A DNA stretch of 63,484 bases, filler included, from Lenisia limosa (taxonomy: Eukaryota > Protista > Breviatea): assembly GCA_001655205.1 (NCBI GenBank). It is 10 parts of 10 records of this genome, joined end to end, with 100 filler letters (N's around TTAATTAATTAA, not from the genome) between each part and the next. Parts side by side here need not be neighbours in the genome. Positions count along the whole stretch, not along the records: positions 41,911 to 48,602 come from LPNZ01004492.1; 9 more parts are not named here. One strand, written 5' to 3'. The notes under the pieces are model-generated. The model was given only the letters and a program-made list of their open reading frames with translations, did no database searches and had not been told where the DNA came from. Numbering within the stretch: position 1 is the first letter of the stretch; each line of letters begins with the position of its first letter. Position numbers and translations under genes: made by a program. Shown here piece by piece: positions 41,911 to 47,311 of the stretch.

Positions 41911-44900
41911 TCGTCGGAAACAAAACGGATCTTGCAGGCGACCGACAAGTCACCAAGCAAGAAGGTATGATTGGGGTTTGTGTTTTTTTTTTATATACAT
42001 ATATGATATGTTTAAAGTTCAACAAAAAAGCAAAATATTCTTTTCAGTGATAACCATAGGTATTGACGCGGCCAAAAAGCTTAAGATTCCGCATATGGAA
42101 ACTTCTGCTCGTACCAATACGGACGTTGAACTTGCCTTCCACGAGTTGGTCAGACAGGTTGGGGGCGGCCATTATTTTGGTTATTTGGTGTTTTTGAGGG
42201 ATTACATCACTTTTTTTCTCGCGATGGCTTGGCTCTAAAGTGTTTGAATTTTTTAAACTACCACAAAGATATTGACCCATTGCAGATCCCCACCAAACTA
42301 CCGCAAAGATATTGACCCATTGCAGATCCCCACCAAGGCCCTGGGCAACTTCACACGCTCGGGCATGGAGTTCAAGCTTGTCGTTGTCGGAGGGGGTGGC
42401 GTCGGCAAATCCGCCCTTGTTGTCCAGGTATGTTGGTGCTCTGATGGTGTTAGATAGGATATTTTACCATTTACATTTTTACTTACTCAAAAACTTAGCT
42501 AAAACTATTTGATCGATTGTTAATCAGCAATCAGTAAATTATTGAGCAACATGCATTTTTATTTTAATTGCAAGTACGAAACAACTATCACCCTGTAGTT
42601 CATTCAAAACCATTTTGTTGACGAATATGACCCCACCATCGAAGACTCCTATCGCAAACAGTGTGTCATCCAGGGTATGCTGCGTGGCTCTTGTTGTTAC
42701 CCTATACAGATGGAGTTCAAATGTGTTTTGTATTTGTTTCCGGAATTGGCTTACTTTGTAATCAATAATAGTTTATTATCTTATTCCCTAGGCTTACAAT
42801 GGGAGCTTTCCAAGTCGGAAAAGAAGAAGAAAGAAAAGCTGGAGAAAAAGGCGGCCAAAGAAGAGAGGAAGGAAGAGAAGAAGAAGAAGCCCAGCGCCCT
42901 TGCAAGGCTGTGTGGCAAGGGTTCTAAGGACGACATTGAAACACCTCCCCCTGTGACTGCTGTTGAAGACGAAACGTGCGTTGGTACCATTTTTTCAACG
43001 ATTTTTTTTATATTCTGTGATTTAATACCAGCCGAAGTGAACAGACAATATTATATTTTCCTTGATACTTTCTATTACTTATCACTTATTTCCATCACTT
43101 ATTTTTACATTTTTCTCTAACACCGCAGTGTATCGGAACAAGATGAGGTCGAAGGGGAGAAGAAGGATTACACCAAGAAGGTATGCAATTAGTCTCAAAT
43201 AGAAATCTACCATGTCAGTTAGCTGTTTTCCTGCTGATACATTTTTTTGAAATAGTTTTCTTGACACTATAGACTGCTAACAGCATCCAAGTCATAATGC
43301 CTGACCCCAATTGTTTCTCAGTCCATCTCAACGAAATTGAGAATCCTCTTGAAACCATCATCTCTGGTTTGTGGGTGACCGCTTGCGTCTTCTAAGCGGA
43401 CTTCTATTGGGTGAGTATAAGCAGCAACACATTTCAGTATTGTCAACACAAGGTCATATTCCAATCTCCTAGGTGAGCCCCCTCGTTGCTCCTGCGGTGC
43501 CGTGGCTCTGGCTGTGGACCCTTCTTGTGACGGTAAATGGGCATCAAATACTGAATATCGATGCGTCAAAATACTCAGCCAATTCGGATCACCTCTCTCC
43601 TCCCCACTCCCTTATTGACCCAATAGATGGTAATGATTTGTTTGACGACGAGAACAAAACCCAGGATGCCGTGAAGACCCCTGTCAGCTGTCTCTTCTGC
43701 GGTTCTAAACTGGTGTGCAAGAGCTGTGCGAGATCCAATAACCAATCAGAATTGTCCCTTAAATAACGTTTTCATTCTTTACTCCTCACAAATATTAACC
43801 TATCAGGACAGCAAGGCAGTAATGCAACCTATGGCCGAATTCGAGCTGTCTCCCCCTCCTGTTGAAGGTTTGCTCTCTTTGAATCTGTATCAAGAAGGGA
43901 TGGAACCATTTACATTTTAATCTTCAGTAACACACCCATATTGGTAAGCCCTATTTCACTTGCTATAGAAGAGGAGCCTGAAGTCATTGATGATGAGGAT
44001 GTGAAGATTGAAGTCAAGAAGAAGCCTAAGGTTTGGAACGCTGGTACTCAACTGGTGTATATAACATTGTCTGGAGCTTTCAGGGACAGGGTTCACCTCC
44101 CCCCCCCCCCCNNNNNNNNNNNNNNNNNNNNNNNNNNNNNNNNNNNNNNNNNNNNNNNNNNNNNNNNNNNNNNNNNNNNNNNNNNNNNNNNNNNNNNNNN
44201 NNNNNNNNNNNGCGGTTCAATGAGCTGCACTGAACAGATCGAAGCAGGATTCGGACTTGTGCAGCAGGTGTGGGGTATTATGTGGTGAAAAACTGAGAAA
44301 TCAGTGAGACCTGCTTTCTGTTCAACTCAACGGCTCTATTATCGCTGTCTTCTGATGAAATCGGTTCCTTCTTATTTGACTGTGTGTAGAAAGGCCAAGC
44401 GGCAGCGTCTTATGTCAGCAGGCTCTCGTCTGCTCAGCAGGTATGTGTGGTATGGGCCAGCTTGGTTCCTCACTGTTGGTGGTTCCAAGTGTATATCAGT
44501 TGAATAACAACACAAGCTTGTTTTATTTCTCATCTCTAAACTATACTTTCTATTCTTCTTATTCCTCATCTCTATATCATATACTATCCCCAAAATCGCC
44601 ATGATGGCATGGATGGCTTTAACAGGTACTCCACCTTTGTTATTTCTCATTTTTATAATAAACCCGTTTCACAACCTGCATGGGTTTGATGGTGATTGAT
44701 GGATCTCGAGTAATCTTCCAGGCACTAGACATGAACATCAAGGAGACAATTGAGTCCAACCCGAACCGGAGAATGGTGATTGTGGAGTTTGGAAGGTTAG
44801 GACTATCTCTGTTTTGATTTGGGGTAAAGACATTATATACAATGGTGGTATTCCTCATTTATTCATGCAGCCAATTTAATTTGACTTTTTAGTACCCTCA

Positions 44901-47311
44901 AGATATGGCGTCCCACAGAGGAGGGCATGATCTCTGAGGTAAGTGACGGCATATATATTACATAACACACTTGAGCAATATTGAATCATAGCAAACTTGA
45001 GAATCGTACATCCCATCCCATGTGCCCTTAACTGTTCAGGATTTCGACGACGTCTCAGGCAACATCAAGAAGCTGGTCGAGAAAGGCAGAGAAATGGAAA
45101 TTGACAGCGTGGTTAGTGTCGAAAAGTCCGAGGCCGGGTTATGCAAGGTAAGCATCTTAAGACACTACTGCACATCAAATGGACCTTTCTGACCAGCAGA
45201 CGATCCAGGACATGCGGACTCGAGGCTGTACCGCCCTCGGCCCGGCCCTGGCAACTTCCGTCGGCATCGCCTCACAGGTGGGGGTATAGTACAAGGGTGA
45301 CAAAGGAAGGGAAATCAGTGCTTCAGCTATACCGCATGTACCAGACTCTCAGTAGCAAAGCATTTTCATCTCTTTCAATTCGCAGCGTTTTCTTCTCTTT
45401 AAATCAATATCATGCACTAATCTATTAAGGAGGATGTGGCTGAGATTATTCTCTGTACAGATGGCCAAGCAAACCAAGGTTGGTGCACACTGTGGAACTA
45501 AGGACTAACATCGTATCTGAATCAATGGTCTCTTACCCCTCACAGGAATTGGTTCGACCTCATCTCCTGACGTCAAGGAAACTTACGCTAAAATCGGAGA
45601 CATTGCGGCCAAGAACAACACCACCAGTTGGGGGCTTTTATCAATCTAAAAGGCATTCTATTTTATTCCTCACCCCCGTATCTTACAATGCTTTATTTTT
45701 TGTGTTATTTCAGTTCTTTCTTTCGGTCAAAAGTACTACTGTGCCCACAACAGCATCAGAGAAGTATTGTATTTACTCCCCCCCCCCCNNNNNNNNNNNN
45801 NNNNNNNNNNNNNNNNNNNNNNNNNNNNNNNNNNNNNNNNNNNNNNNNNNNNNNNNNNNNNNNNNNNNNNNNNNNNNNNNNNNNNNNNNGAAGACCGGCG
45901 GCACAATTGAGTCTATTCGACCCATTGAACTTCAGACCAGAATGAGACAGATCCTTGATAACCCTAGTAGGCCTTCGGTAACTAGCTTTTGGTGTAATAA
46001 GCCCCCTTGTCTCCCACTCACAATTCAGCATTTGCCAATGGTACAGTCAAACTGCGTCTGTCCCCTGGACTGGCCTCGAGAGCTGAGAAAAGTGGGCTTG
46101 GATGAATAGAGGAAACGAGAAAAGTACTACCATGTTTTATTTCTTAATCGATCATTCTCAATATTCATTGCATCACGCCATCTCTCTTCCACTGTTAACC
46201 CCTCAGAATCTGAAGTGGTTATCTTTGACGGACCTATTAATAAGAAGGTTGGTTGAGAAAATTTCAATGTATCTCCCCCGAATAAGACCCCCGCGTTTAA
46301 GTTTCCATACACTGCGTTGACGTTCCAATCCGCCTTCATTCTGCTTAGTCCACCTGCACTGGCCAGTTCATCACCACCAATCTCAAAAAGGCACAAAAGT
46401 CTGACTTTGCTGCAGCTCAAATCGAGGTTTGGAGAAAACAAGTACCCCTTAACTTTTAATATAATATTAGGATTATAATAGAAACACTGTAATGGTGACC
46501 CTGCAGGTGACGTACGAACGACTTGATGGGTCAAAGTACGTGCGCGCCATGACTGTTGCGCTCGAGATCACTGCAAGCCGCTCTGAGGCTCAGGAAACTG
46601 TTGATATCAGCGTGGTATGGGGGGGATAAGGGGTTCAGAAATTTTTAAGGATTGTAATTTGAAAATTATACATACCGATATGTGTGTTTTATATTTGGAC
46701 TGAACCATTCTTAGAAACTCTTATCCATTCCCAGATGTCCCTTTCAATCCTCCACCACGTGGCACACTTGGCTGATACGTCCAAGCTCGAAAACGCGAGG
46801 TGTGATGGGGTCCTCTGTAGCAACCGCTAGATCTATGATCCAAAGTAACAATAATATATTTACCTTTATTCTTGCCAACAAGGGTTCGGTTTTATAGTCT
46901 TTTGCCTATTTGTCCACCCTTCTCTTCATTCACCCTTCAGGGCATACTTGCGAGTTGCTACTGGCATCCTAGAGATTGCTGCCATCACACCCCTCCAACA
47001 AGAAGAATTCTCCAACTTCCTGAACAAAACCGATGTATGGATATGCAATTACTATTCTTTGTTTGGACCCTCTCAATCATTGCCCCAGTGTACCTTGTAA
47101 TTGTCGTTTTGCACGAAGATGATTTGGGCTTTTTTTTTTGTTTTAGACGTTTTCTATTTTACTCCCCCAGGATTTCGATGTGACCATGCACCGCGCATCA
47201 ACCCTCAGCCGCGACGTTGTCACTCAGACCGTGGCCCAAATGAGGAAGCCCGTTTACGATGACTTCCTTTCAGGCAAACGTAAAAATGTTGGTGCATATG
47301 ACTCGAAATGA
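41911..47311 (+). CDS. Circularly permuted Ras GTPase-VWA protein (cpRAS type; 5' partial)
   Basis: In-frame splicing gives VGNKTDL (G4)...METSAR (G5)...AFHELVRQ|[34 protein letters not shown] (G1)|[26 protein letters not shown] (G2). Then come a Lys/Glu-rich linker, CSC...CLFC motifs, and VWA motifs [47 protein letters not shown], ending KNVGAYDSK* at 47311. Confidence 0.9.

What the first reader, a model, noticed from the sequence alone, without database searches (positions are those of the whole stretch)
41911..47311. Circularly permuted Ras GTPase fused to a charged linker, Cys-rich module and VWA domain (cpRAS-VWA)
Seen in sequence: Ras motifs occur in the order G4 (GNKTD), G5 (ETSAR), G1 (GGGGVGKS), G2 (YDPTIED) in one continuous spliced frame. 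Where canonical Ras continues to DTAGQEE (G3), this protein runs into [15 protein letters not shown]..., CSC/CLFC motifs and a VWA domain. Established knowledge: a G3-G4-G5-G1-G2 cpRAS domain combined with VWA has been described (Dictyostelium, a few animals and protists) with patchy distribution and unknown function, so the architecture is rare rather than new. Inference: G3 lies just upstream of the contig edge at 41911. The intact G1/G2/G4/G5 residues suggest nucleotide binding is retained. A gene predictor would probably split this into a truncated Ras and a VWA gene.
Basis: partly seen in the sequence, partly recalled or inferred. Interest (0 to 1): 0.88.

Follow-up and report, generated by a model that had tools for sequence, protein, structure and literature searches.

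The report
Circularly permuted Ras fused to VWA
This is an expressed, intron-rich eukaryotic gene for a CPRas1-type protein, a Ras GTPase with its segments in rotated order joined to a zinc-finger and VWA module; the family was described in 2008 and its function is still unknown, so this is a new member and not a new kind of protein.

Summary
On the + strand, 29 GT..AG exons form one open frame from the piece edge (41913) to a TAA at 47479-47481.

- **Ras order:** the exons run G4 (NKTD), G5 (ETSAR), a 13-residue loop, G1 (GGGGVGKS), G2 (YDPTIEDSY). They match HRAS 132-162, then 2-22, then 23-47. The chain leaves the domain at the Gly48 equivalent, which is the beta2/beta3 break that defines cpRAS.
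- **Rest of the protein:** a 78-residue K/E-rich linker, a Cys motif (CxC...CxxC), a VWA domain with a complete MIDAS, and a conserved C-terminal part. Sixteen of 18 short signatures taken from the seven published CPRas1 proteins occur in the same order.
- **Gap 1:** an RNA contig bridges it with 40 nt, in frame, and this rebuilds CVDISGSM.
- **Gap 2:** it is not bridged by any letters I could see. The family alignment predicts about 21 hidden residues.
- **RNA support:** RNA contigs confirm nearly all junctions from 42975 onward. None covers the Ras exons.
the true 3' end is 47481, reached by a splice 47287>47431, not 47311.
- **G3:** it lies off the contig and could not be tested.

Verdict: a new member of a known family.

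The parts
41913..41964 (+). First visible exon, cut by the piece edge: end of strand 5 and G4 (VGNKTDL)
   Evidence: GT donor. The piece starts inside the exon, so the gene continues upstream.
42060..42157 (+). G5 exon (ETSAR) and helix 5, matching HRAS 132-162
   Evidence: Pfam Ras profile 130-159, E = 4.6e-5; PDB HRAS 132-162. Acceptor 42059 is preferred over 42047 because it gives the G4-G5 spacing seen in the family.
42255..42334 (.). 40-bp tandem duplication (98% identical) covering the acceptor and the first 9 nt of the G1 exon
   Evidence: Using the first copy's acceptor gives an in-frame stop. DNA unitigs break here.
42326..42427 (+). Loop from helix 5 to strand 1, strand 1 and G1 P-loop (GGGGVGKS), matching HRAS 2-22
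   Evidence: No RNA support. An alternative in-frame acceptor at 42338 is not excluded.
42599..42674 (+). Helix 1 end, G2/switch I (YDPTIEDSY) and strand 2, matching HRAS 23-48; the chain leaves the GTPase fold at the Gly48 equivalent
   Evidence: 22/23 identical to H/KRAS 24-46, E = 1.3e-10.
42675..42791 (+). Intron of 117 nt, stop-free and in frame with both flanking exons
   Evidence: open frame 42599-43117. G2 and the linker stay in one frame whether or not this intron is spliced.
42792..43366 (+). Three exons (42792-42975, 43129-43180, 43273-43366): a 78-residue K/E-rich linker with a polybasic core, then the lead-in to the Cys motif
   Evidence: RNA contig 9 covers 42801-43355 with both junctions.
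43473..43712 (+). Two exons (43473-43532, 43627-43712) carrying the Cys motif: CxC, then C, then CxxC
   Evidence: Junctions come from RNA contig 10, which shows no sequence differences.
43807..44030 (+). Two exons (43807-43867, 43969-44030): acidic spacer before the VWA domain
   Evidence: RNA junctions 43712>43807, 43867>43969 and 44030>gap.
44112..44211 (.). Assembly gap 1, hiding the rest of an intron and 40 nt of exon
   Evidence: The RNA contig joins 44030 to 44212 with 40 extra letters (table 5c). These are in frame and rebuild ...VIICVDIS|GSM.
44212..45147 (+). VWA exons 44212-44267 (MIDAS SGSM), 44390-44440, 44722-44795, 44893-44938 and 45040-45147
   Evidence: [15 protein letters not shown]. 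RNA supports 44267>44390. Exons 44722-44938 have no RNA cover.
45200..45626 (+). VWA exons 45200-45277 (MIDAS Thr, CTALGPAL), 45430-45478 (MIDAS Asp, IILCTDG) and 45546-45626
   Evidence: RNA contig 11 junctions.
45789..45889 (.). Assembly gap 2, hiding the rest of an intron and an exon part of about 61 nt (about 21 codons)
   Evidence: Phase 1 going in and phase 2 coming out. The family has about 21 residues between ...TT and the (K/M)T(G/S)GT motif. Not bridged by letters I could see.
45890..47287 (+). Conserved C-terminal exons: 45890-45966, 46029-46091, 46207-46247, 46349-46426, 46507-46614, 46735-46799, 46941-47034 and 47171-47287
   Evidence: All junctions come from RNA contigs 12 and 13. 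Family signatures found: [46 protein letters not shown].
47431..47481 (+). Last coding exon; stop TAA at 47479-47481
   Evidence: RNA junction 47287>47431, and the contig runs on to 47504.

Best explanation
This is one transcribed, intron-rich gene for a CPRas1-type cpRAS-VWA protein. About 754 of an expected 860 or so residues are visible or inferred. The N-terminal 110 or so residues, which in the family hold a short variable lead, strand 3, G3 and strands 4-5, lie off the contig. Shown here: the Ras-family domain is permuted. Helix 5 runs through a loop of 12-16 residues into strand 1, and the chain exits at the beta2/beta3 turn. The visible nucleotide-binding residues are intact: P-loop K/S, F28, T35, NKxD and SA(R). 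The effector loop is identical to HRAS 32-40, and there is no CAAX. A K/E-rich polybasic linker, a Cys motif and a VWA domain with a complete MIDAS (DxSxS, T, D) follow. Inferred mechanism: the domain binds GTP and cycles like Ras. The polybasic-hydrophobic stretch just after the GTPase takes the place of the missing prenylated tail and holds the protein at a membrane. The nucleotide state of the GTPase controls, within the same molecule, metal-dependent partner binding by the Sec23/24-like zinc finger-VWA-barrel-helical module. No member of the family has been characterised experimentally.
For: One open frame over 29 GT..AG exons. Pfam Ras hits in permuted order and HRAS residue mapping. No G3-like motif and no CAAX-stop between G5 and G1 anywhere in the piece. 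The G2-linker intron is stop-free and in frame. RNA contigs at 99% or more identity confirm the junctions from 42975 to 47431 except those around exons 44722-44938 and at gap 2, and bridge gap 1 in frame, rebuilding the family-invariant DISGSM. Sixteen of 18 family signatures occur in order, taken from the published sequences. The architecture is as defined. Control loci L001 and L004 show the canonical order, G1-G2 before G4-G5. For the linker idea: every published member has a Lys-rich stretch followed by a small hydrophobic patch right after strand 2 (read by eye).
Against: No RNA contig covers 41911-42800, so the G5>G1 and G2>linker junctions are not shown by transcripts. G3 and the N-terminus are missing. 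Gap 2 is unresolved. The first zinc knuckle is CxC, not the family's CxxC, and the C-terminal YYxY is absent. No single VWA exon reaches a Pfam or PDB hit, and no homologue could be fetched for a computed alignment. The mechanism is entirely inference.
Confidence: 0.88

Rival explanations
1. Two unrelated genes, or an assembly chimera. On this reading the 3' exons of an ordinary Ras gene (G4, G5) were placed next to a separate gene that starts at the ATG of MEFKL and encodes a Ras stub plus VWA. The join would run through the 40-bp tandem repeat where the DNA unitigs break.
For: DNA unitigs end and overlap only within the repeat at 42255-42334. A Met sits exactly at the canonical Ras start. 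No RNA covers the Ras exons.
Against: There is no CAAX-stop or other plausible terminal exon between G5 and G1, and no G3 after G2 in 6.7 kb. A protein with only G1-G2 would not form a GTPase fold. The G4-G5-loop-G1-G2-basic linker order matches seven published proteins motif for motif, including the exit motif VIxG(L/I). The unitigs lie on the assembly with no differing letters.
Confidence: 0.06
2. The expressed gene is a VWA-only paralogue whose transcript starts near 42800, and the Ras exons upstream are an untranscribed relic.
For: RNA depth is 0 over 41911-42682. VWA-only relatives of the C-terminal half exist in several taxa.
Against: The Ras exons are intact, with canonical splice sites, no stops and 22/23 identity to HRAS in the G2 exon. 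The frame stays open from G2 through the intron into the linker exon. The published VWA-only proteins lack even vestiges of cpRAS. The RNA contigs are few and of low depth (5-13), so a missing 5' part is unremarkable.
Confidence: 0.04

Closest known systems
CPRas1-type cpRAS-VWA proteins (Dictyostelium DdiCPRas1 EAL68747.1, and the Naegleria, Capsaspora, Monosiga, Amphimedon, Branchiostoma, Strongylocentrotus and Acanthamoeba proteins; Elias & Novotny 2008, PMC2430557)
   Same: Permuted Ras-family domain with helix 5 running into strand 1 and an exit after strand 2. Lys-rich linker. Cys motif. VWA with DISGSM, TALGPAL and LCTDG. Conserved barrel and helical C-terminal part ending in FLSG..K. 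No CAAX. Sixteen of 18 signatures in order.
   Different: The loop between helix 5 and strand 1 is longer: 16 residues between the ELVR motif and the F/Y-K start of strand 1 (12 with the alternative acceptor), against 7-11 in the family. The first zinc knuckle is CxC, not CxxC. There is no C-terminal YYxY. G5 reads SAR, not SAK. The N-terminus and G3 were not seen.
Canonical Ras (HRAS/KRAS/NRAS, R-Ras2)
   Same: Residues equivalent to HRAS 2-47 and 132-162 are close to identical, including the switch I effector loop and the P-loop.
   Different: The segment order is rotated. There is no hypervariable tail or CAAX. The domain is embedded in a protein of about 860 residues.
YRG/YlqF/YawG circularly permuted GTPases (G4-G5-G1-G2-G3)
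   Same: G4-G5 precede G1-G2.
   Different: In that family G3 follows G2. Here the chain leaves the fold right after strand 2 and no DxxG follows. The sequence belongs to the Ras family, not TRAFAC-YlqF.
Sec23/Sec24 COPII inner-coat proteins
   Same: The order zinc finger, VWA-like trunk, beta-barrel, helical region. Pfam places the family's VWA under the Sec23/24 trunk, PF04811. Read by eye, a barrel motif of the form Q..Y...G..YVR..T is present.
   Different: A complete MIDAS is present. There is no room for a gelsolin domain. A GTPase is fused in the same chain, where COPII recruits a separate Sar1. I did not test this similarity with a tool.
DdiCPRas2 (cpRAS inserted in an alpha-2-macroglobulin/COG2373-like protein)
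   Same: The cpRAS domain.
   Different: The flanking regions here are the linker, zinc finger and VWA, not macroglobulin-like repeats.

Membership tests
CPRas1-type cpRAS-VWA | G4-G5 followed by G1-G2 in one polypeptide, with helix 5 joined directly to strand 1 | tested here: met
   Spliced frame. Pfam Ras profile 130-159, then 1-18, then 19-43. HRAS 132-162, then 2-22, then 23-47. The junctions themselves lack RNA support.
CPRas1-type cpRAS-VWA | G3 (DTAGQE) and strands 3-5 lie N-terminal of G4 | not testable with these tools
   The piece starts at 41911 inside the strand-5 exon. An exact-DNA scan of metagenome contigs found no overlapping contig.
CPRas1-type cpRAS-VWA | Break of the fold at the beta2/beta3 turn | tested here: met
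   Ras homology ends at the HRAS Gly48 equivalent (YRKQCVIQG), then the linker begins. The family exit motif V-I/V-x-G-L/I is present.
CPRas1-type cpRAS-VWA | Ras-family identity, including the TIE G2 motif | tested here: met
   YDPTIEDSY; 22/23 identical to H/KRAS 24-46.
CPRas1-type cpRAS-VWA | Poorly conserved linker after the GTPase | tested here: met
   78 residues, of which 22 are K or R and 20 are D or E.
CPRas1-type cpRAS-VWA | Zinc finger with four conserved Cys (CxxC...CxxC) upstream of the VWA | tested here: inconclusive
   The pattern is CxC-x13-C-x24-CxxC. The canonical first knuckle is absent and RNA agrees with the genome. Acanthamoeba lacks the finger altogether.
CPRas1-type cpRAS-VWA | VWA / Sec23-24 trunk domain within a conserved C-terminal half | tested here: met
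   Family signatures [42 protein letters not shown]...MRQILDNP, the barrel motif, QEEF..FL and FLSGKRK all occur in order. Single exons are too short for Pfam (no hit).
CPRas1-type cpRAS-VWA | Length 840-970 residues with a variable N-terminal lead of 40-66 residues | not testable with these tools
   733 residues visible, about 21 in gap 2, and about 107 expected upstream by comparison with Capsaspora.
Canonical small Ras | Order G1-G2-G3-G4-G5 and a C-terminal CAAX | tested here: not met
   Order is rotated. No CAAX-stop after G5. Controls L001 and L004 show the canonical order.
YRG/YlqF cpGTPases | G3 directly after G2 (G4-G5-G1-G2-G3) | tested here: not met
   No DxxG-type motif after G2 in any frame of the piece.
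Sec23/Sec24 | Zinc finger, trunk, barrel, helical and gelsolin domains; trunk without a working MIDAS | not tested
   Known only from the literature and reading by eye. The barrel exon has no PDB sequence hit. MIDAS is complete here.

The most novel reading that the evidence does not exclude
Two readings remain open. First, the CPRas family may be a single-chain analogue of the COPII pre-budding complex: a Ras-type switch fused to a Sec23/24-type module, with the polybasic-hydrophobic linker acting as the membrane anchor that replaces the Ras tail. Second, the source organism, which I could not identify, may lie outside the lineages where CPRas has been published (Opisthokonta, Amoebozoa and the heterolobosean Naegleria), which would support an origin in the last eukaryotic common ancestor.
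Probability: 0.15. Interest if true: 0.55.

Novelty: new member of a known kind. Interest (0 to 1): 0.27.

Why it matters
CPRas proteins contradict an earlier claim that the GTPase fold cannot be opened at the beta2/beta3 hairpin. They may date to the last eukaryotic common ancestor (PMC13393502), and no function has been assigned since 2008. One more intact, expressed member adds a data point on distribution. It also shows which features vary: loop length, the first zinc knuckle and the C-terminal tail. The MIDAS, the effector loop and the basic linker are kept. For annotation, the case is a warning. Short exons, two gaps inside exons and a contig edge inside the GTPase domain would make automatic predictors split or truncate this gene. 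Five of the seven published models needed manual correction.

Tried and rejected
Because the gene is spliced, tools could only be given single exons or stop-free stretches by reference. This blocked every whole-protein search and any structure prediction. I did not paste the spliced protein or the published sequences into any tool.

- phmmer of the 36-residue barrel exon against 1.84 billion representatives: 0 hits.
- Exact-DNA scan of metagenome contigs with exon 1: 0 hits.
A 66-residue stop-free stretch holding the G1 exon returned four loci. Two are canonical-order Ras genes, and the other two (L002, L003) matched only in the P-loop stretch.
- The search for homologous proteins with two stop-free stretches, aimed at transcript-derived fragments that would cover the G5>G1 junction and gap 2: no candidates.
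- The look-up of encoding contigs with a mechanical ORF: not on record.
- ESM Atlas on one exon: only chance phage hits.
- Pfam and PDB on single VWA or barrel exons: nothing.

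Full report
**What is there.**
The piece 41911-48602 is eukaryotic DNA with 43% G+C and short introns of 52-181 nt. On the + strand I built a model of 29 exons, and every visible boundary is AG/GT. It gives one open frame in two parts. The first part is 503 residues, running from the piece edge to gap 2. 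The second part is 230 residues, running from gap 2 to a TAA at 47479-47481.

**The Ras part.**
- Exon 41913-41964 encodes VGNKTDL (G4).
- Exon 42060-42157 encodes G5 (ETSAR) and helix 5.
- Exon 42326-42427 encodes a 13-residue loop, strand 1 and the P-loop GGGGVGKS.
- Exon 42599-42674 encodes the end of helix 1, switch I (YDPTIEDSY) and strand 2.

Pfam's Ras model matches these exons at profile positions 130-159, 1-18 and 19-43. PDB searches map them to HRAS 132-162, 2-22 and 24-46, the last with 22 of 23 residues identical and E = 1.3e-10. Ras homology stops at the equivalent of HRAS Gly48, which is the turn between strands 2 and 3. That is the break that defines cpRAS. It is not the break between strand 3 and helix 2 seen in YlqF-type GTPases.

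No G3-like DxxG motif exists in any frame of the piece, and no CAAX-stop lies between G5 and G1. Two Ras loci fetched from metagenomes show the ordinary order and serve as a contrast.

**The rest of the protein.**
- After strand 2 comes a 78-residue linker with 22 K or R and 20 D or E residues, including a 27-residue core with 14 Lys.
- Next is a Cys motif of the form CxC-x13-C-x24-CxxC.
- An acidic spacer follows.
- Then a VWA domain with all MIDAS residues: DISGS, the Thr in CTALGPAL, and the Asp in LCTDG.
- Last is a conserved C-terminal region.

**Family membership.**
Elias & Novotny (2008) define CPRas1-type proteins by this exact architecture, and their Additional file 1 prints seven full sequences. 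I turned 18 short conserved stretches of those sequences into patterns. Sixteen occur in my model in the same order. The two misses are the first zinc knuckle (CxC, not CxxC) and the C-terminal YYxY. Read by eye, several motifs are closest to the Naegleria protein, for example MRQI.DNP, KYVR and ITxxRS.

**The gaps, tested first.**
- Gap 1 (44112-44211): one RNA contig joins 44030 to 44212 with 40 extra letters (table 5c). These are in frame and rebuild ...VIICVDIS|GSM across the gap, which is the family-invariant MIDAS motif. The two sides are therefore continuous and in frame.
- Gap 2 (45789-45889): the exon before it ends in phase 1 and the exon after it begins with the last base of a codon. 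The hidden exon part must therefore have a length of 1 mod 3. The family has about 21 residues between ...TT and the (K/M)T(G/S)GT motif, which fits about 61 nt. An RNA contig runs 82 nt past 45626, but its letters were not shown. Continuity across gap 2 is likely but not proven.
- Both gaps are preceded by poly-C runs. These look like contig-end artefacts, not genome sequence.

**Transcript evidence.**
Five contigs from a poly-A RNA run of the same study lie on the piece at 99% or more identity. They show 15 listed GT..AG junctions from 43531 to 47431, plus those implied by contig 9 at 42975>43129 and 43180>43273. The spliced tail (KRKN-VSKRKGH) also fits the Naegleria tail better.

No RNA contig covers 41911-42800. 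Nor does any cover exons 44722-44938. The link between the Ras exons and the rest therefore rests on four points:
- canonical splice sites and matching phases;
- the 117-nt intron between G2 and the linker being stop-free and in frame, so the frame is open either way;
- the absence of any alternative terminal or G3 exon;
- seven published proteins with the same order.

**How it probably works.**
Shown here:
- The visible guanine-nucleotide contacts are intact: K16/S17, F28, T35, N116/K117/D119 and S145/A146, with K147 changed to R.
- The effector loop equals HRAS 32-40.
- There is no lipidation box.
- MIDAS is complete.

Inferred:
- The domain is a working GTP switch that canonical Ras regulators and effectors could read.
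- The Lys-rich stretch followed by a small hydrophobic patch is present in all published members right after strand 2 (read by eye). It may replace the Ras tail as a membrane anchor.
- The switch may gate Mg-dependent partner binding by the Sec23/24-like zinc finger-VWA-barrel-helical module.

No experiment on any family member was found in the paper library. A 2026 paper only notes that CPRas may go back to the last eukaryotic common ancestor.

**Rivals.**
- An assembly chimera through the 40-bp tandem repeat at 42255-42334, or two separate genes, is possible in principle, because the DNA unitigs break there. It would leave a Ras without a tail and a stub with only G1-G2. It would also have to reproduce a known family's motif order by accident.
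- A VWA-only transcript with relic Ras exons conflicts with the perfect state of those exons.

**Limits.**
Because only stop-free references can be given to the tools, no whole-protein search, computed alignment, tree or structure prediction was possible. The comparison with the family is by short patterns and by eye. The source organism remains unknown.

**Verdict.**
This is a real, expressed gene and a new member of the known CPRas1 (cpRAS-VWA) family. Interest is modest.

Noticed in passing
window 42255-42334: A 40-bp tandem duplication (one mismatch) copies the 3' splice site and the first 9 nt of the G1 exon. Using the first copy would give an in-frame stop. DNA unitigs of run X1 break exactly here, so it could be a real duplication or two alleles laid in tandem by the assembler.
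   Followed up: partly
window 44100-44111 and 45780-45788: Both assembly gaps are preceded by a poly-C run. Other X1 contigs also end in poly-C followed by unrelated sequence. These look like contig-end sequencing artefacts, and they make the gaps fall inside introns just before hidden exon parts.
   Followed up: no
window 42675-42791: The intron between the G2 exon and the linker exon is 117 nt, has no stop and is in frame. A retained-intron transcript would still encode a full-length protein with a 39-residue insert at the exit of the GTPase domain.
   Followed up: no
window 45964-47121 and 47315-47700: The DNA run X1 shows almost no contig depth here although the RNA contigs cover the region. 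The tool warns that a hole proves nothing, but the assembly of this part must rest on other data.
   Followed up: no
window 44510-44545: A short stretch in an intron attracts several unrelated X1 contigs at 90-95% identity (bin depth 78) and a spurious joint 44545>47120. It is probably a dispersed short repeat.
   Followed up: no
window 43473-43532: The first zinc knuckle reads C-S-C where all zinc-finger-bearing published CPRas proteins have CxxC. The RNA agrees with the DNA. A third Cys 13 residues on might substitute.
   Followed up: partly
L002 1364-1486 and L003 1441-1563: Two near-identical metagenome contigs carry a GGGGVGKS-type P-loop with no other Ras motifs nearby. They were not looked at further.
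   Followed up: no
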